A stretch of 64,000 nt of DNA from Ylistrum balloti (lineage: Eukaryota), in contig NW_026782147.1 of NCBI RefSeq assembly GCF_031769215.1, forward strand, positions 558,001 through 622,000, given 5' to 3'. Positions 12,501 to 48,200 of this stretch are shown one piece after another (position 1 is the stretch's first letter; every line of letters begins with the position of its first letter). The notes beneath the pieces were generated by a model. It was not told where the DNA came from. It saw only the letters and a list, made by a program, of their open reading frames with translations, and ran no database searches. A program made the translations under genes and the position numbers.

Positions 12501-15500
12501 ACTATCCCAGTATTGCTAAATGATGTTGAAATTTGAGGACTATCCCAATGATGTTGAAATTTGAGGACTATCCCAGTATTGCTAAATGATGTTGAAATTT
12601 GAGGACTATCCCAATGATGTTGAAATTTGAGGACTATCCCAGTATTGCTAAATGATGTTGAAATTTGAGGACTATCCCAATGATGTTGAAATTTGAGGAC
12701 TATCCCAGTATCCCTATAAGTGTTGAAATTTGGATTATCCGAGTTTCCCTATCAGGAGTAGATGTGATACATACTTGAAAGGTCATCATAGAGCTCACTG
12801 GTGGGTCGGTCAGATTCACTGTCTGACCCTGCTGTAGAGGATCGTGAGGCCAGACTCCGTCGCTGCTGAGGAGGCGTTGGAAGCACATACTTGTTGGGTT
12901 TTCTTCCAGACTGTTTTGTTTTTATGCCTGCCTTCCGTGCTGTCTTTATCAAAGTTTTCTTTGCAAAATGTCTGAAGGAAAACGATTTTGTACATTAAGT
13001 AAGAAAAAACGCCGGATAGAACAGTAAAGAATTATTCTGAAATAGGTGATTAAAAACTTTTAATTTCCTAAATTTTGTCCAGTTCTGATCAACCCTGATG
13101 TCAAGAGCTTTTGACAGCATTTATATATGGTGTACTATAAGAAACATTTAACTTCTCATGTCTTCAAATAAATGTTTAAGTATCTGTATCTGTCAAAGTT
13201 TTGTTCCATTGACAGACTTGACCTCCAAGTGTAATATAAATTAGATGTTTGTTTTTATGGTGTATGCTTGACATAATGCTAACATATTACTAAGATTTAG
13301 CCACTCTAGATGTAATCTAACCTATGACCCCAACTATAGGATCTTTGGCTGAAAGCATCTCTTACTTGAGAGAGGCATTTTTTTCCTTGTGTTTGTGTAA
13401 AGGCGTTGGTTGTAGGATTGTCTGGCCAGAGAAGGCGAAGGTGTTGAACACATTGTTAGGGTTGCGGTATTTGTTAGAGAGTTTTCTGAAGGCATCAACG
13501 TCCTCTGGATTCACTTCTTCATCAAAGGCGATCTTCATCAGCTACAGTCACACATTAACATGTTAAAAAGGTTTTATCTCAATTCAAATAATAATATTGA
13601 CATCTGGTGATCAGCATGTTAACATAACAACAGAATAAATATATGAAATGCATGAAATCAGCTGAAGAATGTTTAATTTTAGCAAGGTGCTGGCAAGCTA
13701 AAAACAAACAAGATTTCTTTGGGGCAGAACAATCTACACCCAGCCCATGCCAAAGAGAAATACCTTATCAAATTGAAATGAATATAAATGTGGAAATGAA
13801 ACATTAATTGAAGAATGTTAAACAAATGTTTAATTTGTAATTAATCTTGAAACAGAGGAACAGTTCCCTGTCTTACTAGTGGTATTGTTGTCAGTGTAAG
13901 TCACTATACCTGAAATATATTCGATCTCAGCTGGATGCCATCCTTTGGGAGCTGGTCAATATGGGGAGTGTATTGCAACTTGATCTGTTTCTCCTTGGTG
14001 AGGGTGGACACTGGGAAGTATCGCACTACCACTTGCTCACAAGCTATAACAAGGGAGATAACTCAATTTCTACATCAAAGCAAAATCCATAACAATAAAA
14101 ACGATCAAGATATTCAATGTGAAGCATCTCAAACAAGGTTTATTAAAAATATTTTACAAATTCATCTCTTATTTTAATAAAAATTATAGTAAAACAATTC
14201 CACTTTGTTATAAGCAAGAACTTTATCAATTTTATTAAGAAAATTCCCACAAGTCATGAATGACCCCCTTCAGTACAAACCAAAATCTAATCAGGTGTAG
14301 AAGTTGATGTTACAACACTATGGGATGAATGTGAATCAAATCCAATGAGGAGAGGCTCTTAAAATGTAACAATTATTTAGAATGGGGTTGATAACATTAA
14401 ATGCTCACGAACCCAACAAAATAGCATAAAATTCATTCTACAAAGCATCGTACCCAGAGGATCACAGGGAATGCCCTTAAATATGATTCTGTAGTTAGTG
14501 AGGAAAATGGCTCCCTCGGCTGGCAGTAGACTAGGTCCTCCCATGTTACTTCCCATACCCTCCTCTCGACCATCAGGGAGAAGGTACACTCTCAAACCAT
14601 CCATTACCACCTCTTCTCCTGATAGCAGGGTCGGCTTCAGGATCTTTGGCTGAAAGCATCATACACCTCTTCTTAGACATTTTTTGTTTTTAGTACATAT
14701 GCTTATCAAGTATGACACAAAAGCAAATTTTAAATTCATGTCTGATGTTTTCATCTAATGACGGCAGGGAAAGAGAGGTATTGTGAAACTTTTCATATAC
14801 ATAACTATGAACTCATATCTACAAGATACAAAAAGTGATACAGCTTGGAGTTAATGTCCTGTACAGTCTTTATTTTCAATGGTTCAAATTTTCAAAAACA
14901 CTCAAAAAAACCCATATCTTTCTCAAAAGTCAAGAAAAAGACTTTACTTTTGTCAGTTAATTCTATTTTTTTGAGTTCTATTTGTCATAATTTATTCCAT
15001 TCTCTACAATTACAAGAAAACCAGAACCCTCTAAAAAAGACAACATACACAGTGCCCTGTCTCTGCCTTCTTACCTTCTGTATGGGAGGTAGACGCTTGC
15101 TCTCCCTGTGGACTGCCTCCAGTGTTTCAATATGCATGGCCACCACACCTGTAGGAAAACAATGGGTTTTGTTTAAGACGTTTCTACTTAGATTGTTCTG
15201 ATGTTATTTGTCTTCTGTGATATTTGCTGTTTCAGATTTGTTTTCACATTGAACATCTCTATTGAAAAAAGTGGTAAGATAAATAAAAATATGAGGACAA
15301 GTAATCATACAGACTTTATATCAGATATTTCTGAAGTAACAGCTGTCCAACTACTTGGTAACCATAATAAGATTTTATCAAGCAAGTATACGATAATCTA
15401 TTTCTCAAAAACTGTCCTTCCCTAAATTCCTAACCCCAAGTATTCATTGTCTTCCTTTGGCTAATTTGTGTCATCCTTAAAACCCATAGCCCCAAACCAA

Positions 15501-18500
15501 TATAATATGATGTGTCTACCTGGAACCATCTGGTGCAGAGCCTTAATGTGGTCTTGAGTCACGCCACTATCATTGCACACTTTGTCGACAAATCTTGTCA
15601 CAAATCGCACCACAGTCGCTCCAACATCAGAAATCTCTGTCTCGTCAAATCCACTCTCGGCATCAATACTGTCACTCTCCGCCAGACTGAAAATTCAATT
15701 TCTTCTGGTAAATATTTACCTCATTATACAGCTTGGACATTTTTTTACAGCAAAGAGAAAAGTAGCATAACACGGAATACATGTATGGTACAATTCATCT
15801 TCCAGGAAAAAAAATGTAGAAAACACAGATGTTCAGTGTAACATGTAATGACCTATCATCTCCATTGCTGCTGTGAAGTAAGTGTCATCTCCATTGCTGC
15901 TGTGAAGTAAGTGTAAGTTTGAATGTTTTTTTGACACTCAAGAGAATTTAGTAAGTAGCATAACATGTAATAGCTTTTTACTATTGTATAATGCATGGTT
16001 CTTATTTAATAAACCATTACCTACATAATGGTGTCCTTAGGGATTTTTCTGAATATTCTGTGAAATTGTATGTTTTGACATCCAAGCTTTCACTCAAGAC
16101 CATTTCAGGATCCTTTTAAGCAAGTTTGAGTTGGATTCCATAAGTGGAGTTTGAAAAAGGATTTTTGTCGTAAAAAATCATGTTAGTCCAATCATCAAAA
16201 TGGCTGCCTATTTTTTATCAGCAAACCACTTATCTGACAGTGACACATGTATCTCTGTTGACAGTACTAAGCTGACAGTGATACATGTATCTCTGTTGAC
16301 AGTACAAACCTGACAGTGATACATGTATCTCTGTTGACAGTACAAACCTGGCAGTGATACATGTATCTCTGTTGACAGTACAAACCTGACAGTGATACAT
16401 GCATCTCTGTTGACAGTACTAACCTGACAGTGATACATGTATTACTGTTGACAGTACTAACCTGGCAGTGATACATGTATTACTGTTGACAGTACTAACC
16501 TGGCAGTGATACATGTATTACTGTTGACAGAACTAACCTGGCAGTGATACATGTATTATTGTTGACAGTACAAACCTGACAGTGAAACATGTATTACTGT
16601 TGACAGTACAAACATGACAGTGACACAAGTATCTCTGCTGACAGTACAAACCTGGCAGTGATACATGCATTACTGTTGACAGTACTAACCTTAAAGTGAT
16701 ACATGTATTGCTGTTGACAGTACTAACCTGACAGTGATACATGTATCTCTGTTGACAGTACAAACCTGGTGGTAATACATGTATCTCTGTTGACAGTACT
16801 AGCCTGGCAGTGATACATGTATTACTGTTGACAGTACTAGCCTGGCAGTGATACATGTATTACTGTTGACAGTACTAACCTGTTGGTAATACATGTATCT
16901 CTGTTGACAGTACTAACCTGGCAGTGATACATGTATTACTGTTGACAGTACTAACCTGACAGTGATACATGTATTACTGTTGACAGTACTAACCTGACAG
17001 TGATACATGTATTACTGTTGACAGTACTAACCTGGCAGTGATGTTGCTATTACTGTTGCTCTCCCAGTCGTGTGGTGAGAGGGTTTTGATGGGTTTGGTT
17101 GTCTCTAAGGGAACTCTCATGTACACCATCCTATTGCTGTAGTGGATAGCTTGACTATACACTGTTGACTCTTCGTTATTTGTCATCTCAAGCTGCTGCT
17201 CGGGGCTCAGGGTCGGCCATATTCTTAGCTGCAATATAAAGATGTTTGAGAAATCAGTTCTGTAATATAAAAATGTAGCATAATTTAAGACCCACTGAAC
17301 CGTTCTAACCAGGTTACATGAAAAAATCTCAAGTGTCATTCCACAGTGCTGATATAATGGTAAGGCCAATTGTAAGATCTTTCAGTTCACAATCACATGA
17401 TTAAATTAAAATAAAAATTACAATTGTGAAATCATGTGGTCATGAACCACAAGTTTTGATCTTGCTTTAGGGAGCTATGGACTGAAAACACTAAAGCACA
17501 ATAGATAAATGGAACATTCACCTGTTCAGCAGCAATCTCCAGTGCCCCAATCTGTCTGGGTTTGAAGCCTGAGAGTCGTCTCTGTGCATCTGGTGTTGTA
17601 GATGAGCCACGATAAGATGGTACATTCAATTCATCATCCTGAAAGAAATGAGGAAAACCCAGATGTAGAGCCTTACGTAGGTGTAATGACCTATCATCGC
17701 CATTGATGCTGTGACATGAGTGTATGGCCAACTTACTATTTTCATATCAAAGGGCCAGAGGCACTGAAGAGCATTAGATTACAATTGCTTATCTGGATTT
17801 AAATTGGTCACCAATTAAACAAAACAAGGTATGCCGGGGCTTACATAGATGTTACCCCTACCCCCAAATTCCATCTATTTATTTCCCGAAAAATAAAGTG
17901 TCCCTTTGACCCTCTATACAGCAGAGGTATACAGTACATACATTTCTGTACTGGGGCGGGCTGTAAGAACTGTCACGTTTCTTTTCCATTATCATGTGTT
18001 CTTCGTACTGGGGTAGATACAGCTGTTTAATCTGTTTCTGGACGTCCTGGTAGAAGGCAGCCTCCCAGAATTGCTGATTCGACCAGACTGGATGCTCCTG
18101 TACCAGTGTGTAGGCAAACTGGATCACCCCTGTACAAAGTTTCTGTAAAACACAGCATCGTTAGACATTAACGTGAAACACCACATCTATCATTGGTAAT
18201 ATTGAGACCATTTCTGTCTGTTTTAATTGAGTGTAAAACACAGCACCGCTGGACATTAACGTGAAACACCACATCTATCATTGGTAATATTGAGACCATT
18301 TCTGTCTGTTTTAATCAAGGTGAACATTTGTTGTTCACAGATTATATAATAAATTATACTGAATGAGAACAACCTACTTATCTTTGACCGGTCCTCCACA
18401 ATGATTAACAACTATACTTCAAAGTTTGAGACTACAAATGTGATCAAGGAAACGTTCACAAGCTATTAAAATAAATCATGAACCACCGACATTCAGCACT

Positions 18501-21500
18501 GGGGCTGAACTACTACGACTGGACAAGAAGTCTTTGAAGACATATTTGGCAGTTTTCATTGGACATCTTTATACTGAATTAGACAGGATGTCAGAACATT
18601 TAGGAGCTTGATATGTCACATTTCAGGACCATAACATGTAGTTTAAACCAAGCTGAACTGTAGGTGTTTTTTAAAAGTTAAAAGAGGAGAGGTAGCTAAA
18701 GTAAGGATTGTACAATCGTATTTAGAGGATGTTATGCCTCCAACAGTAGGAGACAGCTAATCAGACTTTATACTTACCCGACAAAAGGAGGTAGCTAGAG
18801 GAAGGATGGCTGCTGCAATTCCATTTTCATCCATGCTAGAGTCATTCTGGTGTCCAAAAGAAACAAAAACACATAAATGTAATGCTATGTAAAAATAACA
18901 CATGATCAACTGCTTCTGGTTATACTGAGAGATCATCAATTTTTGTGGGGTTTTTATTTTTGTCATTTCATGTGTACTCTATATCAACAAATTCATAAGT
19001 CCACAAACTCTTAAAATTTGTATAAGCAGATTTATTGAGATATATCTTTGTCCACAAATTACAGTATTTTTTTGAAAACCACAAAATTGAGCCTCAAGAA
19101 ATAGATGATTTTACAGTATATATGTAATTCATACCAACACGTCAAAGTTCAAAGACCAAATACCAAACTACAAGTCAAAGTTCAAAGACCAAATACCAAA
19201 CTACAAGTCAAAGTTCAAAGACCAAATACCAAACTACAAGTCAAAGTTCAAAGACCAAATACCAAACTACAAGTCAAAGTTCAAAGACCAAATACCAAAC
19301 TACAAGTCAAAGTTCAAAGACCAAATACCAAACTACAAGTCAAAGTTCAAAGACCAAACTACAAGTCAAAGTTCAAAGACCAAATACCAAACTACAAGTC
19401 AAAGTTCAAAGACCAAATACCAAACTACAAGTCAAAGTTCAAAGACCAAATATCAAACTACAAGTCAAAGTTCAAAGACCAAATACCAATCTACAAGTCA
19501 AAGTTCAAAGACCAAATACCAATCTACAAGTCAAAGTTCAAAGACCAAATACCAAACTACAAGTCAAAGTTCAAAGACCAAATACCCAACTATGTTGAGA
19601 TCTGTAGTACAGTGTTGAGGGAGCATACTGACCTGTAGAGCACAGTTGAGGAGTTTTACGACTAGATCAAACTGTTGGTGCTCCAGCATGGCTCTGTTGC
19701 TGCGTATGTGGTAGCTCAGTTCCTGTGTTAGACTTAGACGAGCCACTCGGCTCTTCAGGGCACGCAGCACTGCTGGGAATATCTGTAACAAGGGTATCAG
19801 TAAAACTGATGAATGCTCTCCGACAGAAGGGTGGATGGACAGACACACAAAGCAGCAAGTATATGTTTTACTCAAAAATTTTCGGGGAGCATAAAAAATT
19901 AACAGAGCTTAGAAAGTATAAATATGTTCTAGACTTTTGTCTGAATTATCAGATGTATTAAACTTGCGAAATTATTTTAATTATGCAGCTAGTGCACCTC
20001 CCCATATAATTTTTGACATTTCTTTTGATCAATTTTAATTTTGCCCAAATTGCTTAAATTTCAAATTTTAGGCCCTTAGCATTTCTGAGGAGTCCTAGAG
20101 GGATGAAACTGCTGTATGTTGCAGTTCAGTCCTTAATTTGGCTCTACTGAATCCGATTCTAAATACTTATTGAAAGGTGCAATTCGCTTGTGTATCTTTC
20201 ATAAGATCTTGAGCTAATAAACTCAGCAAGCTAAAGATAATATATATGTATGTTCACTTTAATTTTGTTTTTCTCAAAAAGTATTGAAATTTATCTACAT
20301 TAATCAAAATCCATACACACTGCCAATGACCAGGAGATTTTAATAGATCTGATAATTTATGAAATAGGCGAAGATTGTTGTGAGGTAAGTACAAATATCT
20401 TGTTGTAAACATCATAGATAGGATATCACTTACAATTCTTGCATCTGTGATTTTATTCTCAAAGATGAAGGTGACACAATTGCGTAGGACCTCGAGACGT
20501 CGGGCATTGTTGTCCACAATTCTGAGTCTGTCAGTGATGAGGGTAATGGTTGGACCTATCGGTACTATTCTCAGCTGTGGTGGCCGTAAGTTATTGAACC
20601 TGTGTGAAAGAAGAACATCAACTATCACAGGGATGGGTCAGACGGTGTGAAGTTAGTCAAAATGGTGTGTATTGGTTGGAATGGTATAATGTACAAGGAT
20701 GGCGTGTCATTGGTTGGAAATTTATAGCTTAAACAGAATTGGGTACGGTTGGATGGTATGGTGTATTGTTTGTTAGGATGGGTGTGGTTGGATGGTGTGG
20801 TATATTGTCAGGATGGGTGTGGTTGGATGGTATGGTATATTGTTTGTCAGGATGGGTGTGGTTGGATGGTATGGTATATTGTTTGTCAGGATGGGTGTGG
20901 TTGGATGGTATGGTATATTGTTTGTCAGGATGGGTGTGGTTGGATGGTATGCTATATTGTCACGATGGGTGTGGTTGGTAGGAAAGATATATTAGTTGTC
21001 AGGATGGGTGTGGTTGGTGAGAATGATATATTATTTGTCAGGATAGAAGTTGTTTGTTTGGATGGTATATTGTTTTTGCGACAAATGTGCTTGGTTGGGT
21101 TGGTATATTATTTGTCGACCAATTGAACTAAAAATGCAGCTAACCACGGTCTTGGAATCATAAATTAACTGAAAATTAGCAGTCTAAGAATTAATTTTTT
21201 CAAAAACAAATCATCAAAACTTTCGACAAAAAATAGATATCAGTACATTTCAATATGATCTATTCGAACAAATGTCTGTCTGATACTAATTTCTACCAAA
21301 AGTAGATACATACTTGGTCTTGACAGGTTGTTTGTGTACACCTTCATCAATGATCTTCTGTACATGTGCCCAGTCCAGATAAGGAAATGGAGGCTGATGT
21401 ATACGTGAATATGCTCCCTCAGTGGGCTTGGGTACCTTCTGTACGTATGGTTGTGGGTTAGGACACTCCTGCAAAACAAAGTGCAAAGTCCAATTAAAAT

Positions 21501-24500
21501 AGTTTTTACAGACGCATGTTACAAAAATCCACATCATCATGTTTCAACGAAGACATTTGGACATAGGATATTGACTGAAATAAGAAGAAGCTGCCAAAAG
21601 GCCTTAACAGTCACACAAGTCCTGATACACTGTCAAAAGGCCTTAACAGTCACACAAGTCCTGATACACTGTCAAAAGGCCTTAACAGTCACACAAGTCC
21701 TGATACACTGTCAAAAGGCCTTAACAGTCACACAAGTCCTGATACACTGTCAAAAGGCCTTAACAGTCACACAAGTCCTGATACACTGTCAAAAGGCCTT
21801 AACAGTCACACAAGTCCTGATACACTCAAGGTTTTTATATTCAATGGTCAAATTTCTACAATTGTCACAAAAGTTTGAAGCCAAATGGATGTATTTTTCA
21901 CTTGAGCATTTATGGAACATGGATATAGTGTTTATTTTTTAATCTTATTCAATCCTTTAATACAGCAGAAATAAAACCCATAAAAATAACAATTATGACA
22001 GCAATGTCTTATATGATGTAATATGATTATTTTGTAGATGAGTGAAGACTATCAATACTAAAGCTCATATCAAAGGCAAATAGAAAGAAAGACCCTGCTA
22101 GCCACCAAACTAATGATGTAAATATTTCTAAATCTGCTTGAATCATTACCAATTGAAACTTGATAAAATGTATCTGAGAGTGTTATTTTCCTTTATAAAC
22201 TAAGGTACAGTTTACTTAACCCAGGACCCCCTCTACCCTCAACCCCATCCCCATCCCAAACCTTATGAACTTTTGGTGTCGGTTGGAGTATTTTATGTAG
22301 TGATGTCAAACCACCATCTTGTTACAAAGTATAGACTGCTGTTTGTACTTCAGGTTCTTTTCAAATATAAACTGATGATGGCACTCTTTGTTGAAATATG
22401 TCAACCTTACTATAAATTTGCTAATAACTCCACTAAAATCAACAGATGCTACCTACTGTTAATCGAGTACTGTAAACCAACTTATTTTCACAACCATTTA
22501 ATTTCACAACATACAGTCATAAATCTGGATGTTACGAAGCGTAAATTATCATTAATATATTAAATCATTATTATTTTACTACATGTATTATACATCAGTC
22601 ATCCGTCAGTCGACTAGAAACATAAACCCAAATTTACATGTAAAAGGCCTACTGTACCTGTGATGGAAACTATTTTGTGAATTTTAATCCCAACCACCCC
22701 CACAAAATAATACACAAATTTAATTGCGTGCGAAATTAAGGTCCACAGTATTTGTTACGTATTTATCCAACTCTCTCCCATTTAACCGCATGTTTATCTT
22801 ACATTGGTATGAAGCTGTTTGGCGATTTCCTTGATGTTACTCATTGTTTTTTCTGGGTCATTCACTTCTTCCTTCAGCTGTTCCTGTAGAACGGCATACA
22901 CCTACCAAACAACAAGCAAGTGTCAATATGGCTGCCTTGTACACATGCCAGTAAAACATATGGGGCAGTAGAACTAAAAAGATTTGTTTTCATTTTCAGT
23001 CGCAGTTTCATCTTTTCTTTCTTTCCTTTCAAACAAAATATTTCAAGTATTACCTATATTCTTCCAAGGATAGCAAACATTTCAAAGAAAGAAAGAAAGT
23101 AAAAAAAAACATCAAATTAATTCTATTCAACAGCATTGTTTCTAGAATTGTGTATGTTAAGTTTTGTAATACTGGAATATTCCTAATTTCAAATGAAAAA
23201 TGAAGAAAAAAAAATTATACTAGTAAGAATGACAGATTTTGACTGACCTCATCAAATATGTCACAGACTCGGTATGGCGGTCCACGCTCTGCTACAAAGC
23301 CTCCAAACGCCATGGCATCCAGAACACGAATTAGGAAATCATCTTCCACCATCCCTTTGTGACCTAGGAAGTTTGCCTAAACCCAAGAAATTTCAGGGGA
23401 TGATTTCCATACGACTTTATTAATGCAAGGAAATGTCTAAGGAATCAAATAGATAAATGAATGTTGTTAAGGTTTTACGATTTTATTGTAATTTTTGCAT
23501 TTTTATCAAAAACTGATAAATTTTCATCACCAAAGTCATGAAATGGGCAATGGCTTCATGCTTCAAGGAATCTATCTTTTGTTTGTTTTTTGTGTCCTAA
23601 AAGACAGTAAAAATAGAAGCCTTTTAATAAACAGAGATGAGATATACTATACCTTATGAAAGGTTATAAATGCTTCAGGATGAATGCGAATCAGTGTGAG
23701 GCAAGTTCTGTATCCAGCAAAAACTTCAGCAAACATACGAATGAATATTGCACGGATTTCTTTGTCCTGAAAAGTATCAGATCGACAAAATACAATACAT
23801 GATTTTCTCCTCCTCTTCTGAGAGTCGAGCATCTCTCGGGGTAGACATTCAATCAGTTATGTTCACTGCAATCTGTCAGTTTGTGGGATAAGTTTAATGT
23901 CACTATATAGTTGTTGTAAGATAATTTCAACTTTTGAGTTTATATTTCCAATGTTTGTTAGTGTTAATGTGTGAAAGTATAATCAACTTGTTTAGCTTGA
24001 CACTACCTACGCTACATGTGACAATCCTAACAGTAACAAAAATTTTGTAATTAGCAGAGGGACAGAATGAGTTAACTCACCTTTTGTTCTAATGAGGCAG
24101 GCTTCTTCGGAGATGGGGCAGGAAATGCATGGTCAGCCATGAGTAGGTCTGGGTTCAAAACCTGTTGTTTATAAGCACAAAAACATCATTAATCAACACT
24201 TGTTATTTACAATTAACACTTGTCGTTCAGAGTCAACATTTGTTTACAGACAACACTTGTCATTCAGAGTTAACACTTGTTTACAGACAACACTTGTCGT
24301 TCAGAGTTAACACTTGTTTACAGACAACACTTGTCATTCAGAGTCAACACTTGTTTACAGACAACACTTGTCATTCAGAGTCAACACTTGTTTACAGACA
24401 ACACTTGTCATTCAGAGTTAACACTTGTTTACAGACAACACTTGTCATTCAGAGTTAACACTTGTTTACAGACAACACTTGTCATTCAGAGTTAACACTT

Positions 24501-27500
24501 GTTTACAGACAACACTTGTCATTCAGAGTTATCACTTGTTTACAGACAACACTTGTCATTCAGAGTTAACACTTGTTTACAGACAACACTTGTCATTCAG
24601 AGTTAACACTTGTTTACAGACAACACTTGTCATTCAGAGTTAACACTTGTTTACAGACAACACTTGTCATTCAGAGTTAACACTTGTTTACAGACAACAC
24701 TTGTCATTCAGAGTTAACACTTGTTTACAGACAACACTTGTCATTCAGAGTTAACACTTGTTTACAGACAACACTTGTCATTCAGAGTTAACACTTGTTT
24801 ACAGACAACACTTGTCATTCAGAGTTAACACTTGTTTACAGACAACACTTGTCATTCAGAGTTAACACTTGTTTACAGACAACACTTGTCATTCAGAGTT
24901 AACACTTGTTTACAGACAACACTTGTCATTCAGAGTTAACACTTGTTTACAGACAACACTTGTCATTCAGAGTTAACACTTGTTTACAGACAACACTTGT
25001 CATTCAGAGTTAACACTTGTTTACAGACAACACTTGTCATTCAGAGTTAACACTTGTTTACAGACAACACTTGTCATTCAGAGTTAACACTTGTTTACAG
25101 AAAACACTTGTTGTTTACAAGTTCAGAACATGTTACTAACCAAAGATCACCAATATGAACAATCAGTGATAACATTTATCTAACTACATAGAACACTGGG
25201 AAGAGGACTTCCATAGGGTTGTTTGATTGCTGGATTTATCATTAACTGCATTCTTCTTGTAGTACTTGGTGGCTGCCTCTATGAACAGTATATGGGAGGC
25301 CCATCACATGTCATCCAGAGCAACTGGGTTAAAGTGTCTTGCTAAGTGTCATGACAGTACAGACCAGTCTATTTTTCAATTTCCTGAGAGGAGAAAATGG
25401 TCATGGTTTGGGAGTACTGAGCAACATGTAAGATTTTCAGCTGAAATTTTGTCAGCCCAACACTCTATCAAATGAGCTATTGTGGATATTAACAGTGTAA
25501 ATTAATATGAGTTCAGCTGTGAAGAGCTGGTCTGAGAAACTACTGTAATAAAATTTTCTAAGTTATCTGAATAATTTTCTATGTAAGCTACTAAATGTTT
25601 ACCATCTTGAGGGATGTCTTTGTCCGTGTGAGTACTGGTTCAGGAATCATGGGCAGATTAATACATTCAGGAATAAATACACTTCCTCCGTCTAAGTCTA
25701 CAATGATTACATCTAACTGAAAACAAAAGTAAAGCAGGGATAGATAATACTATCATAAAGTAAGTCTGGACAATAAGTTCACAATGACCATCTTACAAAT
25801 AGGAGATCCCAAAGCGATCTTAGTATCCATCATTAAATGATCTTTATTAAGTCTTTATTTACTAGAGATCTGCAAGGGATCTTGTACCCAATATACTGTA
25901 AAATCATTCATATTTGTGGGGGATATATTTTGGTTGCTTTCTGGGATATTCTAAATCCATATGTAATTACATAATCTCATTTGGCCATTCTAACTATGTA
26001 TGCTAAAAATTCATCAATATCTTTTATAGATAAAAATAAAAATTTGGGGAAAAAATAACCTTGTACACACATACAAGATCTGTAGAAAAATCAGTTGGAT
26101 TTCAGATTAAAACGTGCCTTTCAGAACAAATATCCATGCAAAACTCCAATTCTTTTTATGACAGGGTTTCTTCACTTGATTTAATTTTTTTAATTTTCAG
26201 TATTAGAGATACATTAGGCTGTCATGTTTTTAATCCTGAGCCTAAAGGCAAGGAGATACTCACGAGATCAGAGGCCTCATCCATGAGAGATGAATGAATA
26301 CCGGCCAGGAATGGGGTTGGAGTGTTGAGCACTTCTATCAGGGGTGCCGGTAGGATAGGAATATATACATAGCTGTAATGAAAGAATCTTTCAGTCAATC
26401 TACAAACATCAATCAAGACACTACAATATTTGTCATGGCAATACTTTCACTTTTTTTCGACAAGTTTTCAATTTTTAAACAGAAGCAGATGCAGTACTCA
26501 TGATCTAGGGAAGTTTACCCAAAATCCTACATATAAAACTCAACTACTTTATCTGTGAAATGTTTTTTTTTCTAAACTGATTCAATCTTAAGAAATTTGA
26601 TGCAATGTCAACATCCATGATTTATTTAAATGGAAAACCAAGCTTAAATGTACTCTCCAGTCAGGCCTGTTTTGAGGGCTTTTTGGGGGTAATAATGGGC
26701 CCCATTCCCAACTGAAATTATTTCATATTAAAGCCAATTTCCCAAAATCTGCAATTTACTCCTAATTCACTATTTTTCTTCCCAAAAGGAGACAAAAATG
26801 TCCAAACTCAAACCGGTGAAAAAAACCTTGACAGTGAAAGTGAAAGTTACATGGTCAGAGAAAAGTAAATGCCTTATTGTAAAGCAAGAAGCCTGCTTTA
26901 CCATATTATCAGATATCATTTGAGTAAAGCAATTTCTTATCAGAAATCTAATGATAAAAAAAATCTTGTGTTTCAATTATTTAGAAGGACTAAGGAAATC
27001 ATTTATCATTTTACCTGTACTTGAAGGGATAAAAAAGAACAGTGAGGGCTCGACAGGCATCTGTCAGACGAGAGTTACTCTGAGAGTGGAACAAAATCTT
27101 GTGGTCCGTCAATGCTGCACAGAAAAGCACCAAGGTATTCTGAATACCTGAAAAAAGAAGTCCAAACAGAATTAGACAAGTAAACAAAACAACCTTTGTT
27201 CTCGACCCAGACAAGTAAAAAAAACAACCTTTGTTCTCGACCCATCTTAAGATATTCTACTCTCTCACAGGCAGTCACTTTATACAGGCAACAGATGCCA
27301 CATACTTTCGCAGAAACAAAACAGACATTGTAAAGTACAAAAGTAATGCTTAGCAGTTTAATTAGTAGCAATGATGTCAATAGCCGTGATTGAAAGTATT
27401 GTAGGTATGTAGTTGTGTCTGTATTTACCCAGCTGTTTGAAGAGGAGGGCCACTGTATTGCCAGATACAGGGATGCTTGAACTAAGTGGAGGCTGTAAAG

Positions 27501-30500
27501 CCTGGCGGTCACCAGCCCCGATGGTGAACCGTACCTGGGGTCCACCTACAAAAAATTTACATATTACTTTAGTAATATAGCACTTTACTGGAAGTCCTCT
27601 GCACATCAAAATTTAACAATAGTATAACAAAGATGGGGCATGCTGTCTCAATGCACAGATCTATAATTATGACTCAACAGACCTGACCTGCACATATAAG
27701 ATAAATTCATTGTTTTGTTGCTTTATATGAGGAATTAAATCTCCTCTTTAGAAAATATTCAGATACTAGTATCTTGTGTATAGGTAACACTCACCTGTAG
27801 GAGGTATCTAGATACTGGTATCTATAGGTAACACCCACATATAGGAGGTATATACAGGTAACACTCACCTGTAGGAGGTATCTAGATACTGGTATCTATA
27901 GGTAACACTCACCTGTAGGAGGTATCTAGATACTGGTCTCTATAGGTAACACTCACCTCTAGGAGGTATCTAGATACTGGTATCTGTAGGTAACACCCAC
28001 ATATAGGAGGTATATACAGGTAACACTCACCTGTAGGAGGTATCTAGATACTGGTATCTATAGGTAACACTCACCTGTAGGAGGTATCTAGATACTGGTC
28101 TCTATAGGTAACACTCACCTCTAGGAGGTATCTAGATACTGGTATCTAGATACTGGTATCTATAGGTAACACTCACCTGTAGGAGGTATCTAGATACTGG
28201 TATCTATAGGTAACACTCACCTGTAGGAGGTATCTATATACTGGTCTCTATAAGTAACACTCACCTGTAGGAGGTATCTATATACTGGTCTCTATAAGTA
28301 ACACTCACCTGTAGGAGGTATCTATATACTGGTCTCTATAGGTAACACCCACCTGTAGGAGGTATCTAGATACTGGTCTCTATAAGTAACACTCACCTGT
28401 AGGAGGTATCTATATACTGGTCTCTATAAGTAACACTCACCTGTAGGAGGTATCTAGATACTGGTATCTATAGGTAACACTCACCTGTAGGAGGTATCTA
28501 TATACTGGTCTCTATAGGTAACACCCACCTGTAGGAGGTATCTAGTAACATACTGGTCTAGATACTGGTATCTAGGTAACACTCACCTGTAGGAGGTATC
28601 TAGATACTGGTATCTATAGGTAACACCCACCTGTAGGAGGTATCTATATACTGGTCTCTATAGGTAACACTCACCTGTAGGAGGTATCTAGATACTGGTA
28701 TCTATAGGTAACACCCACATATAGGAGGTATATACAGGTAACACTCACCTGTAGGAGGTATCTAGATACTGGTATCTATAGGTAACACCCACATATAGGA
28801 GGTATATACAGGTAACACCCACCTGTAGGAGGTATTTATATACTGGTCTCTATAAGTAACACTCACCTGTAGGAGGTATCTATATACTGGTCTCTATAGG
28901 TAACACTCACCTGTAGGAGGTATCTAGATACTGGTATCTATAGGTAACACCCACATATAGGAGGTATATACAGGTAACACTCACCTGTAGGAGGTATCTA
29001 GATACTGGTATCTATAGGTAACACTCACCTGTAGGAGGTATCTATATACTGGTCTCTATAGGTAACACCCACCTGTAGGAGGTATCTATATACTGGTCTC
29101 TATAGGTAACACCCACCTGTAGGAGGTATCTAGATACTGGTCTCTATAAGTAACACTCACCTGTAGGAGGTATCTATATACTTGTATTTATAGGTAACAC
29201 TTACATGTAGGAAGTATATTCAGGTAACACCCACATGTAGGAAGTATATACAGGTAACAGCCACCTGTAGGAGGTATATACATGTAACACTCACCTGTAG
29301 GAGGTATCTAGATACTGGTCTCTATAGGTAAAACCCACCTGTAAGAGATATATACAGGTAACACCCACCTGTACAAGGAACACTTACCTATAGGCGGTAC
29401 TTGAATACAGCCTAGTATGTTGCCCACCAGAGACTCCAACTGATAGTCCAGCTTATCAACATAGGTGGAGTAAATAATTCCGAGGCAGTTCTGGAACCAA
29501 TGTAAAATCTGATGAGTTATCCATACATAGAAAGTGAACTGACTAATGATGACATTTTTTTCTCATGTACAATATTTCATTTTTTCAGACGAAAAAAACC
29601 CCCATATGAATGCTGTAAAATCTGTGATCCTGGGTTTAGCAATATATAAAATTAGTTATATGGAGGCCTGTGTTACAGAAACAAAATTGTACTATACATC
29701 TATTAATTATACATGTATCTACACACTATTTTCAATGATCATTTTTATTGCACCTACCCTGAACACATCAAAGTAGTCAAGTCTTGAAACAAGGACGAGG
29801 GACTTCGGGGCGAACATGAGAGAGCTGTGAATCCCCGAAGGCTCATCCCCATCTGGGTCATCTCCCTTGGTACTCGTGATAGCGATTGTCTCGCTGAATG
29901 TCAGACATGTGCAGAAGTGCCGGTCTGCATCGATGTCTGTCAACACTGCCACGAAAAATTGTGGTGGCTCCCGGCGACTTGACAGCGACCATCCTACTGG
30001 TTGACAAAACTGGAAAAATGAAGGTGATGAATTTTGACATATATAAGCAATGTTTTGTGTCAACACTCCTCTCCAATCAGCCAGCCCACTGTTACTCTCA
30101 TTTAGTAATATATGTGGTATACTTTTGTATCAAAGTCCAAAATCTGTTATCATGCATGTAATCTTATGGGTAAAATAGCGAAAAAAATGACAATGGCAAA
30201 AAAAACTGTCTGTTGCTGTAAACTAATAGGCAATACACAAAGTAATTGGCTAATTACTTCCATGAATTCTGAACCACTGTTAAAAAACTTGAAGTGCAAG
30301 ATCTTCATTACGAACCCAGCGTGGGCTGCACATTCAATTAATTAGTCGACGACAGGTGAGCTAGCTTGCCAGAGAGCCTCTGAGAAACATGGATCAGTAA
30401 TGACATATTCACAGACCAAAACAACTTTTAATTCATCGAATGTGGTACAATACCCCGACAAAGAGCATTGTTTCCATAGCAACATGAAGGTCAATCCCAG

Positions 30501-33500
30501 TTATTTAAAAGCATGGCTTCACATACAGGTGACAAAGGCACTGATTGGATTCAAACATGTTTTTAAGTTTCATGTACCAAACATGGACTCCGCAGACTAA
30601 AACATTTAAGGAAATAAAATGTCTCCAATGCTAAAATCAACAGCATGTGTCCAATTTCACGAAAAAATGCAAGTCAAGTCAATAGCACATAATGTTAACT
30701 GAAAGTCATTATCTCTCGTGTAATTTGCTACGATAATTTTTTTGTGATTGCGTAATTCATGAAGTAAACAACACAAGAAAGAAAGTAAGTAGATAGTATC
30801 TACAGTGTCTTCCTTCCAGGTTCCACTATAACCAGAAAGAGCAGTATGGTATCCATGTTCCTGTTCCCTCCAAGGTACCACTAAATAAAGTTGTAGGACT
30901 AATAGGAAGTGTAAATATATCTCCAAATTGGCGCAAATTAGATTTTCAACTAAATTGTACATGTATTTACTGGTGGACTATGTGTAAGATTAAACTTGTG
31001 TGTGATATCTTAATTTGTCATCTTAGCAAGTTTGAAAAGTCAGACACAGATGCCTTCTTTTGTGTAGACATAAATACCCAATAATTACACAATAATAAAC
31101 ATGCTGCCAGAACAAGGACATTCAACAGTGAGATGATTCCTGGACACAATAGTAGTCACGAAGACGGAAAACCTGTCAACCAACCAACTAAGCAACCAAA
31201 GTTGCCAGAACACTGACGTTTGTGCGTGACACAATACCCAAACACAAGAGGAGTCAAGGAGACGGAAAACCTGTCAATCAACCAACCAAAAATAATAAAA
31301 AATGAATGGATAAAGAAGTGGCTGGTTCGACATTTTTCAAATTTTATTTTGACTAATTGCAGTACCCGGAGTGAAGTTACTCTATTTCCAAAATTAACAC
31401 TGGGGGGTGGGGGTAGCGGGAAGGAGACACAACGTCCCGCAAACATTAAAATCAGGAAGGTCCTTCCGGGAACAGCCGTGGATCCAAAAGGATACTGAGT
31501 ACCCACTCCTGACGTCTATTTCCAAAATTATGAGAATCCTGAATCCTGATTTGGAGACACCCGGAGGTCATTTGTATAAAACTGCAGATCAAAAACACAG
31601 AACTGTAGCAGATGATATGAATTTACAATTCATGAAGTGAAATAACTGGTGTACCCCAGTCAGCAACTATGTATGTATTATTCCCTTTCCATTAATAAAG
31701 GGGAACTCACCAGTTCTATCCCTTGTGTAAAAGGGCAGTTTTCCCAGTCCATTAATTAAGGGGAACTCACCAGTTCTATCCCTTGTGTAAAAGGGCAGTT
31801 TTCCCAGTCGGTTAATTAAGGGGAACTCACCAGTTCTATCCCTTGTGTAAAAGGGCAGTTTTCCCAGTCGGTTAATTAAGGGGAACTCACCAGTTCTATC
31901 CCTTGTGTAAAAGGGCAGTTTTCCCAGTCTGTTAATTAAGGGGAACTCACCAGTTCTATCCCTTGTGTAAAAGGGCAGTTTTCCCAGTCCGTTAATTAAG
32001 GGGAACTCACCAGTTCTATCCCTTGTGTAAAAGGGCAGTTTTCCCAGTCGGTTAATTAAGGGGAACTCACCAGTTCTATCCCTTGTGTAAAAGGGCAGTT
32101 TTCCCAGTCGGTTAATTAAGGGGAACTCACCAGTTCTATCCCTTGTGTAAAAGGGCAGTTTTCCCAGTCCATTAAATAAGGGGAACTCACCAGTTCTATC
32201 CCTTGTGTAAAAGGGCAGTTTTCTAAGTCCATTAATTAAGGGGAACTCACCAGTTCTATCCCTTGTGTAAAAGGGCAGTTTTCCCAGTCGGTGTCTGGAA
32301 ATCTCTGGATTATCTTTCCGCTGCTGGTGCCGCCTCCTGAAATAACGATAAATGAAAAACATAATGAAACAAAGTCTTGTACAAACGACTGTCAAGTTAA
32401 GTCTGTTAATTAGAATTATCAGTCAAGGAACTGCCAGTGCAGGGTCTTCAGAGTTGTGGCAACCTCACTGAACAACATGCAGGAGTCCCATCATATTGAA
32501 CAATTAGAGTAAAGTGTTTTGCCAAAGGACACATTCATTACAGTGCAGCATATCACTGATTTCAAGCTTCCTGAAAAACACAAAGTGGAGGGGATCAAAC
32601 CACACACTGCGGATTTTGAGAATCATTACAGTCCCTTAGTCAAGTTTATAGTTTGTATATGTAATCATTATGTAGAATGGGCATACATGCTAAATAATCA
32701 AATTCACATTCAGTAATATCTGTGTGCTGATTTGGGATGTCAAGACTCCTATATCTTTTCATTCCATTTCAACTTCAATATTATGTGACTTTCTAACCTC
32801 ACAATTTGATTTTTGCTGAAATTCAATAAATCCTTGATCTGGAGACCTCCTTTCACTCGGCTTTTCAATGTTACTGATTGCAATTATGCTTAACAGCTTT
32901 TCATTGAAGAACAATTGTTTCCATGCATCCTCTTTTTAATACACTACACAAAACAGCCAAAATATTCAAATCAACCAAATTGTTATGTTGACATTTTTGA
33001 TATTGTGCCTTTTATATGGCGCCTCAATAGTTCAAGAAAGACAATTGTTTTCGGCTAATTCATGGATATATCAGGGGTTTTTTCCACTGGTTAAAGATGG
33101 GGTATTTAAGCCTCGTTTTGGGAAGAAAATGGTTAAATTGGTGTTTCAGAGGTCCTTATTATTTTGATGCCTCTGCTAGCTTTCAAACCCAGTCCTCTGA
33201 TTTACTAATCTTTTGCTCAGCTGATTAAGGTAACGAGGAGATCTCTCCAAAACCTAGTTAATTGCAGCTAGTATTTTACCAGGATTTCACTAGGAAAGAA
33301 AATATCAGGAGTGAATTAATAGCAAATTGGAAATTTGAAATGGATACAAAATAATTTCAATTGGAAAAAGGTTATACCTAAACGTACCTATTTGTCTGTT
33401 AATAAAAGGCTTACTGAACTGAAGAATGGGATTGACTAGAAGCTTTTGTACTTTTTATACCTAAGAAAAGTTAATACATTTTGTACCTTTTCATAACTTT

Positions 33501-45239: not shown

Positions 45240-48200
45240 GTAAGAAATCGGAAGTTATCCAGTATTATGCGGCATGAATCTCTTCCATTGAAACAACCAA
45301 TTAATTTCTGTCATTTAGTGTTGTGAGTAAAGCATTTCGGATTGTTAGTTCAAATTTTCGTAAATTTAGCATTTATAATATCTGTTTCTTTAGTCATCTC
45401 CCAAATACTTTAACCTACAATAAAACTTCTGTTTCTAGCCTGTGAATGAAATAGGAAACTGCATCTTCGAACCTCTTGCTATCACCACCTGTACCTGACG
45501 AGGTCCCAAAATGTAAACCTCTAACCCTGACCGAACCTTGCCTTCATGTCCTCTGTCCTCAGCCTGTACATGGGGGGGGGGTACATTGCTATAAAACACT
45601 GTAATACACTAACCAGATTCTCAACCCAATATCCCCTGTCACCAAGCCTTATTTGACAGGGGGCGACTGAGAAACATACATACTTGTTGATTTAAATGTC
45701 AAACACCGGATAGGTGGGAGGCGCACTAACGCAAAATGATTACATTTCGAAATTTTTAATATTTTCTTAAGAATGCAAACTATGTCTGTATATTCTGAAC
45801 CGTGCCATGATTAGCATGAATCAAAACGTGGCATTCATGATATAGCAAACATCGGGAACTTAAAATTACCATAAGCAGCGTTTACCGCCTGCAATCTCGA
45901 AGATTGTCCAAAAACATAGATAAATAGCACATTTCTATTAAGTTTACAATTATTTCCAGGTGGTCTCCTATTAAAAAAAGAAATATTGTCTATACCTGCT
46001 GTTTAGAAACTCTTTCCAACTTTCATCATAGCTTTTTACTTTCATCGAAAACATGTTTTTTTTTTCTGATTATAAGAATTTAAGAAGTGTCTGTACTTAT
46101 GCCTTTTAGCTATCTATCCCATTTTCTTCAACTTCTTCATACTTCTTTGAACTAATAAATGTACCATCTCTTATATCTGTTAAAAATAGTAAGTCTTGAT
46201 ATGTAAATTTTATCTATCTTTTATTGTCTTCTGTTTCTTCTGATATTCCAGAAACACAAATCCTCTCGCCACTATGACTTTGACCTCAGTGACCCGTATT
46301 GTCACGTGTTCTCTAACGACTATCATCCACTTCATGACCGCCACCTCCGGAACCACTTCAATCAGCCCCAGATGAGGCGTCATCTGCTGAAGAATGATTT
46401 CCTTACTGACGACAACAAAGTAGTTTGTACTCTTAAGGAATTCAACAGGTACCGCCAGTACCTCCGGAGGGTCTGTCTCATGGAGTTGGCAAGGGAGCAG
46501 AGAATCGAGGTATATCTAGCTGCATTTATAATTAAGTTACCTCAGTGACATCACTATTATCGTGCACATANNNNNNNNNNNNNNNNNNNNNNNNNNNNNN
46601 NNNNNNNNNNNNNNNNNNNNNNNNNNNNNNNNNNNNNNNNNNNNNNNNNNNNNNNNNNNNNNNNNNNNNNNNNNNNNNNNNNNNNNNNNNNNNNNNNNNN
46701 NNNNNNNNNNNNNNNNNNNNNNNNNNNNNNNNNNGGATGATTTTACGTTTTTATTTTTGTATTCATAGAAAGAGGAATATCTAAACGCCCAAAAGGAAAC
46801 TACCGACAGCACAGAGGAGAAACCAACAGACCTCCGTATACGCCAGGTCCAAGAGAATCTAGATAAGCAAAGAACGAGGACACGGCAGAGGTAGGATATT
46901 CTGATGTTTGGAAATCAAAACCATTGGGAGAAATTGAGGTATAAGTATTGGTGTATTGGATTGGTAACAGGTTATAAAGACATCTATAGATGTTGCTGTG
47001 AAACCGATAACTCCCGAGTTCAGCGGATATTTGATAACTGGGAGCTTGGTATGTGTATTAAACAATTCTCTCCTTATTCAAACCTAGATGCGTCATTGGA
47101 GAGATTTTTTCAGTAATAATAGCAAATTCTCAAATTTTACTTGACTTGACTTAACTTCATGTACTTTCAAATTTGAATACTCCTGCTAACTCCTCACATG
47201 TATCCTAATAATGATGGGGTGTTCTGACTGTTCTTACTCATGGCTTTTCTTGCCTGCAGGATTGAGCAGTTATTGAAGGAGAAGGCGGATCGATTGCAGC
47301 GCCGTCTGGGAGAGATGCAGGAAGCGAACACAAGACGCGACCTGTTACGTCAACAGGACGAAAGCAAGCGTCATGCTGCCATCGCCCAACATCAATTACA
47401 GGTATGACGTCATACCTGTCAGATTTATTATAAGTGAGAGCAACATCAATCTGTTATTTTCATTATTTTTTCGTTGTAAGAAGTCCATCTGTAACAATCT
47501 TATTGTCAGGAAACCAAATATCTATTAACAAATTGTTAGAATGTTTACAAGATATTTCACCGTCTTATATCATCGAGTAAATTCTAATTTGATTTGCCGT
47601 AAAAGAATAAAAGAATGATTGTAAATGTTTTCTGTAACCTTGACAATATAATTCTTATATACTGTTGATTGATAAGCATTTTTTTCTCTCGCATAAATTC
47701 CCAAGATTAAAATTGCTGCGAATCTCATTAAAGGAGAAAAAACGCAATCGAAGATTAATTCAGCGTTGGAAGATTCGTGAACGACAACATATCAAACGCA
47801 TGGATGAGAAGAAAAAACAACGAATGTTTGATCAGAAAAAGAAGGTAATTAGAAAAAAAAACCAAAACAAAAGGTCAGAACAAAAAATGGCGAGTGTTTG
47901 TTCAGGAAAACGTGATTTTGAAAAATATATATATGACTAGTAGCAAGCGGAAAAAAAATAAATAAATAAAAATAATAAAATTGAGAACCGCGTTGAGACA
48001 CATCATAACTTCCAGTTATTTTGGATGAAAATTATTGAATGATAATTAGTTTTTAGTGAGTAGCATATTCGCCACAATCTTCCTGCAGCTGTAGGTGTTG
48101 TCGCGTCGCTGCTTCCTGGTCGCAGAGATACGACCGCATCAACACTCAGTATCGATAAATAGCAATATCAAGAAAGTAAAAAAAAAATAACAGAGCAGTC

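What the first reader, a model, noticed from the sequence alone, without database searches (positions are those of the whole stretch)
15687..32336. Recurrent tandem amplification of exon/5'-splice-donor junctions within one gene
Seen: in three separate SBF introns (after exons 2, 4 and 19) the tandem array starts inside the exon, and its unit is exon 3' end plus donor (39+21 nt, about 32+12 nt, 27+11 nt). The three units are unrelated to each other and differ in divergence (near-identical, moderate, high), so these are three independent events. They leave about 10, 39 and 21 donor-like sites in tandem. Inference: splice-donor junctions may be hotspots that seed minisatellites here. Alternatively, such arrays are tolerated only because the first donor wins. 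Either way this is a route to intron growth, decoy-donor arrays that could tune productive splicing through NMD, and raw material for intron sliding. I do not know of this being described as a systematic process.
Basis: partly seen in the sequence, partly recalled or inferred. Interest (0 to 1): 0.82.

Follow-up and report, generated by a model that had tools for sequence, protein, structure and literature searches.

The report
Splice-donor minisatellites in SBF gene
Three introns of one SBF/myotubularin-related gene are partly filled by tandem repeats copied from the preceding exon end plus its splice donor. This is a real and locally frequent example of a repeat type already described (amphioxus "mirages", the human F7 intron 7 repeat).

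Summary
On the minus strand lies an SBF/MTMR5-13-like gene. Three intronic arrays (60 nt x10, 44/30 nt x about 35, 38 nt x22) each begin inside the upstream exon and repeat its 5' splice site. The units are unrelated, so these are three separate events. Splicing from the first donor keeps the frame in all three cases.

Independent short-read assemblies support the arrays, so they are not assembly artefacts. No RNA run was found, so donor use could not be tested.

The kind is known: amphioxus "mirages", and human F7, IFI6, CBS, LMNB2 and PDGF, where the most upstream donor is used. This scan has also noted the pattern many times on other DNA of this genome, which earlier agents called a scallop.

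In an unselected 200-kb sample, 22% of the sequence is minisatellite.
- Donor-spanning arrays: 6 seen against 1.2 expected.
- Acceptor-spanning arrays: 0 seen against 1.6 expected.
- Arrays merely near donors show no excess.

A genome-wide word count looked striking (16x) but failed against permuted control words.

Verdict: these are new members of a known kind, and I read them as tolerated local duplications. A donor-specific bias is suggested but not proven.

The parts
32251..32336 (-). SBF exon '2' (86 nt, encodes ...[21 protein letters not shown]). Its last 39 nt are the exon part of the A1 unit.
   Evidence: Weak uDENN match over profile positions 1-23. The acceptor, donor and frame were read.
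31681..32289 (-). Array A1: 60-nt unit x10.1, 97% identical. The unit is 39 nt of exon plus 21 nt of intron. It holds ten identical CTG|GTGAGT sites, and each intronic copy has an in-frame TAA.
   Evidence: The unit is unique in the genome. Independent short-read contigs stop at its edges, and a collapsed 90-nt unit contig has about 14-25 times the depth of unique contigs.
29758..30009 (-). SBF exon '3' (begins FCQPVGW...). It is the in-frame partner of the first donor of exon 2.
   Evidence: uDENN match with E=6e-13 over profile positions 19-57. Junctions.
29388..29490 (-). SBF exon '4' ([35 protein letters not shown]). It ends TATAG|gtaagt in phase 1.
   Evidence: DENN match with E=0.0027. 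Junction and frame.
27779..29387 (-). Array A2: 44-nt and 30-nt unit variants in 74/162-nt higher-order repeats. It fills 87% of the 1842-nt intron and holds 32-40 CAG|GTGAGT or CAG|GTGGGT sites. The exon-derived part is diverged (19 of 32 bases in register).
   Evidence: Its only other genome matches are unrelated donor-bearing arrays at about 70% identity.
27429..27545 (-). SBF exon '5' ([20 protein letters not shown]...). It completes the phase-1 codon left by exon 4.
17032..17228 (-). SBF exon '19' (end of the SBF2 domain, then ...[16 protein letters not shown]). It ends CCAG|gttagt in phase 2. Its last 27 nt are the exon part of the A3 unit.
   Evidence: SBF2 match with E=6.5e-10 over profile positions 190-227. 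Junctions.
16234..17058 (-). Array A3: 38-nt unit x21.7, 90% identical. The unit is 27 nt of exon plus 11 nt of intron. It holds 11 CAG|GTTAGT sites plus weaker GTTTGT variants.
   Evidence: There is no true relative elsewhere in the genome.
15464..15686 (-). Start of SBF exon '20' ([16 protein letters not shown]...), the in-frame partner of the first donor of exon 19. The low end given here is only the end of the open frame.

Best explanation
The three arrays are 'mirage'-type minisatellites.

How they arose (inferred): in each case a short local tandem duplication happened to include the exon's last 27-39 bases and the 5' splice site. It probably arose by slippage or unequal exchange between short direct repeats. 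It was then expanded by unequal exchange.

Why they persist (inferred from the literature): the spliceosome uses the most upstream donor, so every later copy is simply intron. Rare use of a later copy gives a premature stop, which is expected to be removed by NMD. The mirror-image event at an acceptor would put repeat copies into the mRNA and would be purged.

The genome makes minisatellites at a very high rate, so such arrays are common and can hit one gene three times.

Shown here: the anatomy, the independence of the three events, frame-keeping from the first donor, the reality of the arrays in other individuals, and the donor-over-acceptor asymmetry in a sample.

Inferred: the duplication mechanism, first-donor use in this species, and NMD of aberrant products.
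For: - Anatomy and frames.
- Exon origin of the units: in-register identity of 32, 19 and 21 out of 32, against a control maximum of 18. The A1 exon part encodes conserved uDENN sequence, so the exon is the source and not the product.
- Local origin: A1 is unique in 648 Mb. A2 and A3 have only weak matches to other, unrelated arrays.
- Microhomology: GGGAA lies at the start of the A1 unit and again just after the array, 60 nt apart in the inferred ancestor.
- The junction lies at varied fractions of the unit in about ten arrays (my reading). This fits random local duplications, not breaks at the donor.
- High background: 55 arrays cover 22% of an unselected 200 kb.
- Asymmetry: 6 donor-spanning arrays seen against 1.2 expected, and 0 acceptor-spanning against 1.6 expected.
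- Precedent: in human F7 the pseudo-sites are functional but silent because the most upstream site is chosen. The same structure is listed for IFI6, CBS, LMNB2 and PDGF, and amphioxus mirages do not disturb splicing.
- Independent assemblies support the arrays.
Against: - Pure tolerance predicts donor-spanning arrays at the random-placement rate, not above it. The 200-kb sample shows about a 5-fold excess (Poisson P about 0.002), and arrays merely near donors show no excess. Unit consensus sequences also carry strong donor motifs more often than dinucleotide shuffles do (13 against 6.5). Something donor-specific may therefore be added.
- No RNA data exist here to show that the first donor is the one used.
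- The exon calls in the 200-kb sample rest on open frames and splice signals. Only two have weak, sub-threshold Pfam support.
Confidence: 0.6

Rival explanations
1. Donor junctions are favoured sites. Either the DNA at 5' splice sites is prone to tandem duplication (for example through transcription- or splicing-linked damage), or arrays of donors are selected. Selection could act because repeated U1 binding sites protect long AT-rich introns, strengthen exon definition, or tune output through NMD.
For: - In the 200-kb sample, donor-spanning arrays number 6 against 1.2 expected, while non-spanning arrays are not enriched within 50-2000 nt of donors.
- Donor motifs in unit consensus sequences are 2-fold above shuffles and 3.7-fold above random genomic segments.
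- About 30% of all exact CAGGTRAGT copies in the genome lie in tandem runs.
- Three events occurred in one gene.
Against: - The genome-wide word test is not specific. The permuted words GATGRCTGA and AGTCRGTAG have 19% and 31% of their copies in tandem runs, against 30% for the donor word. The striking 16-fold ratio holds only against the tool's reversed word.
- The junction lies anywhere within the unit, and A1 shows ordinary microhomology.
- The sample counts are small and the exon calls are heuristic.
- No expression data are available.
Confidence: 0.28
2. The exon ends were derived from the arrays, not the arrays from the exons. A pre-existing intronic repeat supplied a new donor, and part of a unit was taken into the exon (intron sliding).
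For: The last 25 or so residues of exon 19 (…[16 protein letters not shown]) lie beyond the end of the SBF2 Pfam match and are of low complexity. The exon 4 similarity to its unit is only 19 of 32.
Against: - The A1 exon part is conserved uDENN coding sequence that continues in exon 3.
- Unit lengths of 38 and 44 nt are not multiples of three, so taking in a whole unit would shift the frame.
- All array copies share differences from the exon copy. This is the usual picture of an edge copy left out of homogenisation.
Confidence: 0.07
3. The arrays are assembly artefacts, or inserted mobile or satellite DNA that resembles the exon end by chance.
For: A2's unit has about 70% matches to arrays on two other contigs. 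Short-read contigs cannot span the arrays.
Against: - Four runs from two studies give unique contigs that run into the array edges. A collapsed A1 unit contig has about 14-25 times unique depth.
- The other contigs' arrays have different units. At least one of them starts at the donor of its own, different exon, and they share with A2 little more than the donor consensus.
- A1 has no other copy in the genome.
- The in-register exon identity exceeds all 332 controls.
Confidence: 0.03

Closest known systems
Amphioxus 'mirage' minisatellites (Adh3, troponin C, globins BflGb6/9, PGBD5; PMC3087553, PMC3902484)
   Same: They are tandem repeats of 10-160 bp whose units duplicate an exon-intron boundary and its splice signal. 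They lie in introns of ordinary genes, vary in length, and are reported not to disturb splicing. They have been proposed as raw material for intron gain or sliding.
   Different: Mirages were described in a cephalochordate and at both 5' and 3' boundaries. Here the host is a different phylum (a scallop according to earlier notes, which I did not verify). Only donor boundaries are involved, three arrays lie in one gene, and copy numbers are higher (10 to about 35).
Human F7 intron 7 37-bp VNTR and the similar repeats in IFI6 (6-16), CBS, LMNB2 and PDGF (PMC1557585)
   Same: The first monomer spans the exon-donor boundary, so identical 5' pseudo-sites follow the authentic donor. Experiments show that the most upstream site is used.
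   Different: In F7 only 4 exon bases are in the unit, against 27-39 here. Splicing behaviour has been tested in human cells but not in this species.
Intron gain by tandem duplication of an AGGT-containing exon segment (model recalled from my own knowledge, not checked here)
   Same: A local tandem duplication creates extra splice signals.
   Different: That model duplicates sequence inside an exon and creates a new intron. Here an existing intron is lengthened and no new intron position is created.

Membership tests
Mirage / F7-type exon-boundary minisatellite | Head-to-tail array of a 10-160 bp unit within an intron | tested here: met
   TRF periods of 60, 44 (with 30) and 38, with 10 to about 35 copies.
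Mirage / F7-type exon-boundary minisatellite | The first monomer spans the exon-intron boundary and contains real exon sequence | tested here: met
   The exons are placed by Pfam domains and frame-keeping junctions. In-register identity is 32, 19 and 21 of 32, against a control maximum of 18. A2 is the weakest of the three.
Mirage / F7-type exon-boundary minisatellite | The splice signal is repeated in the intronic copies | tested here: met
   10, 32-40 and 11-17 donor-like sites.
Mirage / F7-type exon-boundary minisatellite | Normal mRNA is made from the authentic (most upstream) site | not testable with these tools
   No RNA run holds this stretch. What can be shown is that the first donor keeps the frame and that a later one gives a stop or a frameshift.
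Mirage / F7-type exon-boundary minisatellite | Copy number varies between individuals | tested here: inconclusive
   The collapsed A1 unit contig has about 14, 22 and 22 times unique depth in three runs, against 10 copies in the assembly. The tool warns that contig depth is not a copy number.
Dispersed satellite or transposon-borne repeat (including introner-like elements) | The same unit occurs at many unrelated places in the genome | tested here: not met
   A1 matches only itself. A2 and A3 match only other arrays with different units, at 66-72% identity.

The most novel reading that the evidence does not exclude
In this genome, 5' splice junctions are truly preferred places for minisatellite birth or growth, through a mutational bias or through selection for repeated U1-binding decoy donors. 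Donor arrays would then be a regular route of intron expansion, and not only a tolerated accident.
Probability: 0.28. Interest if true: 0.65.

Novelty: new member of a known kind. Interest (0 to 1): 0.35.

Why it matters
These arrays show how introns can grow quickly in a genome that is about one fifth minisatellite. They give natural series of 10-40 identical donors, which could be used to test how the spliceosome picks the first site outside vertebrates. If the donor-over-acceptor bias and the excess over random placement hold genome-wide, the pattern would link splicing signals to repeat birth or retention. As it stands, it extends a phenomenon known from amphioxus and a few human genes to another phylum and shows that it can be frequent.

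Tried and rejected
- RNA evidence: the look-up of sequencing runs found only DNA-type runs kept as contigs. Use of downstream donors could therefore not be tested, and read laying served only to check that the arrays exist.
- Genome-wide word test: tandem triplets of CAGGTRAGT gave 4053 against 250 for the tool's reversed word, which looked like strong enrichment. Permuted words of the same composition then gave 1218 and 1502 triplets. Their shares of copies in tandem runs were 19% and 31%, against 30% for the donor word. I therefore reject this test as evidence of a donor-specific effect. Triplet and run counts are dominated by long arrays and dispersed satellite families. What remains from it is that the acceptor-like word TTTTYCAGG is rare in arrays (239 triplets out of 23,133 copies). 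Many of those hits are in fact CAG|GT donors.
- Similar arrays on C789, C176, C704 and C367: I considered these as evidence of a dispersed family. The units differ, and the C789 array sits at its own exon junction.
- The original mirage paper (PMC117041) is not held. The C. elegans minisatellite paper (PMC4039745) proved irrelevant to donors.
- No scallop paper on this topic was found in the library.
- Exons were scanned singly by reference.
- The large protein searches were not used, because Pfam settled the gene's identity.
- The N runs (46571-46734 and 52104-52665) were left alone.
Full report
WHAT IS THERE

The window is G000:C290:558001-622000 of a 648.5-Mb assembly. It has about 36% G+C and holds many minisatellites. 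Earlier notes of this scan call the organism a scallop. I did not verify that.

On the minus strand lies an SBF/MTMR5-13-like gene. In descending coordinates, Pfam finds:
- uDENN at 32239-32391 (weak) and at 29722-30129 (E=6e-13)
- DENN at 29311-29562
- dDENN at 23218-23376
- SBF2 at 20257-20637, 19567-19908 and 16992-17381
- GRAM at 14380-14658

I scanned exons one by one by reference.

THE THREE ARRAYS

TRF reports three arrays:
- A1 at 31681-32289: period 60, 10.1 copies, 97% matches.
- A2 at 27779-29351: period 44, with 30-nt variants and 74/162-nt higher-order units, 83% matches.
- A3 at 16234-17058: period 38, 21.7 copies, 90% matches.

I read the minus strand and fixed the coordinates by string search:
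- Exon '2' is 32336-32251 and ends GAACTG|gtgagt.
- Exon '4' is 29490-29388 and ends CCTATAG|gtaagt.
- Exon '19' is 17228-17032 and ends CTGCCAG|gttagt.

The first donor joins in frame to the next exon in each case: FCQPVGW at 30009, G-GPQVRF at 27545 and S-LAESDS at 15686.

For A2 the exon part has diverged.

Over the last 32 exon bases, in-register identity to the unit is 32, 19 and 21. At 332 AG|GT control sites outside arrays the mean is about 10, the sd 2.5 and the maximum 18. My first version of this control was contaminated by the arrays themselves and was redone.

The three units are unrelated to each other. Donor-like sites number 10 in A1, 32-40 in A2 and 11-17 in A3. The arrays make up 25%, 87% and 59% of their introns. 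Use of the second A1 donor would add 60 nt that read VSSP-stop.

REAL OR ARTEFACT, LOCAL OR IMPORTED

A1 has no other copy in the genome. A2 and A3 hit only other arrays, at 66-72% identity. Those arrays have different units.

One of them, on C789, is 78 copies of a 44-nt unit. It begins 12 nt upstream of the donor of its own exon, after a 60-residue open frame with an acceptor. It shares with A2 little more than the donor consensus.

No RNA run holds the stretch. Four DNA-type runs from two studies were laid as contigs. Unique contigs run up to the array edges (27808/27823, 29302, 32263). A collapsed 90-nt A1 unit contig has about 14-25 times the depth of neighbouring unique contigs. So the arrays exist in other data sets, and the copy number may exceed the 10 assembled. 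The tool warns that contig depth is not a copy number.

IS IT KNOWN?

Yes.

PMC1557585 describes the 37-bp VNTR in human F7 intron 7, whose first element spans the exon 7/intron 7 boundary. It states that several genes (IFI6/6-16, CBS, LMNB2, PDGF) have minisatellites with the first monomer spanning an exon-intron boundary. It shows experimentally that the pseudo-sites are functional but that the most upstream one is chosen.

PMC3087553 and PMC3902484 describe amphioxus 'mirages'. These are minisatellite-like duplications of exon-intron boundaries in Adh3, troponin C, globins and PGBD5. [quoted passage not shown]

I found no paper on this in scallops in the held library. After I had found these papers, the scan's own notes showed that the same pattern had been reported many times on other DNA of this genome, with the same filing. 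Those notes are not independent evidence.

IS IT MORE THAN CHANCE PLACEMENT?

Within the gene alone the case is modest. Between exons 2 and 20 there are 18 donors, about 9 kb of non-array intron and 7 arrays. By my own estimate this gives about 0.6 expected donor-spanning arrays against 3 seen, a nominal P of about 0.02, and the gene was picked post hoc.

Other arrays in the gene are intron-internal or begin 22-40 nt after a donor. One 88-nt duplication ends exactly at an acceptor, and its upstream copy lacks the AG.

For an unselected sample I fetched C367:200001-400000. The sample holds 55 arrays covering 22% of the sequence.

Unit consensus sequences carry a 5' splice-site PWM score of 8 or more in 13 arrays. 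Random genomic segments gave 3.5 +/- 1.7 and dinucleotide shuffles gave 6.5 +/- 2.2. The PWM uses approximate textbook frequencies from my own knowledge.

By eye, at least seven arrays begin inside an open frame that is preceded by an acceptor and include its donor. Two of those frames have weak Pfam support that ends at the donor: WD40_2 with E=0.0014 and AtuA_ferredoxin with E=2e-4.

I then applied one rule to arrays and to background alike. The rule requires a donor score of 7 or more, an open frame of 60 nt or more, and a pyrimidine-rich AG upstream. The results were:
- Donor-spanning arrays: 6 seen against 1.2 expected (7 against 2.0 at threshold 6; 3 against 0.7 at threshold 8).
- Acceptor-spanning arrays under the mirror rule: 0 seen against 1.6 expected.
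- Arrays that do not span a donor are not enriched within 50-2000 nt downstream of donors.

So the sample suggests an excess that is specific to spanning the donor, and a clear donor-over-acceptor asymmetry. The numbers are small and the exon calls are heuristic.

A TEST THAT FAILED ITS CONTROLS

Tandem triplets of CAGGTRAGT, spaced 12-42 nt, occur 4053 times. The tool's reversed word occurs 250 times. Single copies number 23,396 and 7,184. This looked like a 16-fold effect.

Two permuted words of the same composition gave 1218 and 1502 triplets from 13,079 and 8,326 copies. Using pairs minus triplets as a count of runs, the share of all copies lying in tandem runs is:
- 30% for the donor word
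- 8% for its reverse
- 19% and 31% for the two permuted words

The word test is therefore not specific. Long arrays and dispersed satellite families dominate such counts. One example is three arrays on C30 with the same unit.

Two things remain from it. In absolute terms, about 7,000 exact consensus donors sit in tandem runs. The first 100 listed triplets belong to about nine arrays with nine different units. And the acceptor-like word TTTTYCAGG is the rarest in arrays, with 239 triplets out of 23,133 copies. Many of those hits are CAG|GT donors.

HOW IT MOST LIKELY WORKS

The junction lies at varied fractions of the unit. By eye, the exon part is about 0.15 to 0.95 of the unit in about ten arrays. 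A1 also shows a GGGAA microhomology at the unit start and again just past the array.

This fits ordinary local duplication by slippage or unequal exchange, followed by expansion. It does not fit a break at the donor.

Persistence is explained by first-donor choice, as shown for F7, and by the unproductive nature of later donors. Acceptor-spanning arrays are expected to be harmful, which fits their absence.

I put this tolerated by-product reading at about 0.6. A real donor-specific bias, whether mutational or selected (for example repeated U1 sites), is at about 0.28, because of the sample excess. Origin of the exon ends from the arrays is at about 0.07. It is excluded for A1 by the conserved uDENN sequence. 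Artefact or imported repeat is at about 0.03.

VERDICT

The finding is a real and neat case, with three independent arrays in one gene, of a repeat type that is already described. It is frequent in this genome and has been noted repeatedly by this scan. The systematic 'hotspot' claim is suggested by a small unbiased sample, but it is not established, and one attractive genome-wide statistic does not survive proper controls.

Noticed in passing
window 18144-18315 (minus strand; next exon starts at 18142): An 88-nt x2 duplication (96% identical) ends at the acceptor of the next SBF exon (…TGTTTTACAG|AAACTT). The upstream copy reads TTTTACAC, so it lacks the AG and no competing acceptor is created.
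   Followed up: partly
window 12486-12752 and 19137-19592: Two further SBF intron arrays (66/28-nt and 33-nt units) begin 22 and 40 nt downstream of a donor without including it.
   Followed up: partly
window 31007-31507 and 32343-32500: In four short-read data sets these stretches have contig depth of 350-1500, against 11-16 for the neighbouring unique sequence, with many loose ends. This points to a dispersed high-copy element in intron 2 and just upstream of exon 2.
   Followed up: no
window 27779-29351: The 44-nt A2 unit contains a 12-nt perfect palindrome (GTATCTAGATAC). It looks like the 30-nt variant plus an internal 14-nt duplication. The two variants alternate in 74- and 162-nt higher-order units.
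   Followed up: partly
L014 1098-4543 (G000:C789:501597-505042): 78 copies of a 44-nt unit begin 12 nt upstream of the donor of a 60-residue open frame that has its own acceptor. The next exon-like frame follows the array. This is another donor-spanning array in an unrelated gene.
   Followed up: partly
L017-L036 (G000:C367:200001-400000): 22% of this unselected 200 kb is minisatellite: 55 arrays, with periods mostly 20-77 nt and up to 85 copies.
   Followed up: yes
window 52104-52665 and 52666-53585: A 562-base N run directly abuts a 44-nt x20 array whose unit contains GAGA|GTGAGA.
   Followed up: no
window 15856-15914: A perfect 29-nt x2 duplication lies in the intron after exon 19, about 170 nt upstream of exon 20. 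It contains GAA|GTAAGT on the plus strand, which is the non-coding strand for SBF.
   Followed up: no
whole genome G000: A point of method: the reversed-word control built into the pattern search can be far from typical. Words of identical composition differed 4-fold in the share of their copies that lie in tandem runs.
   Followed up: yes
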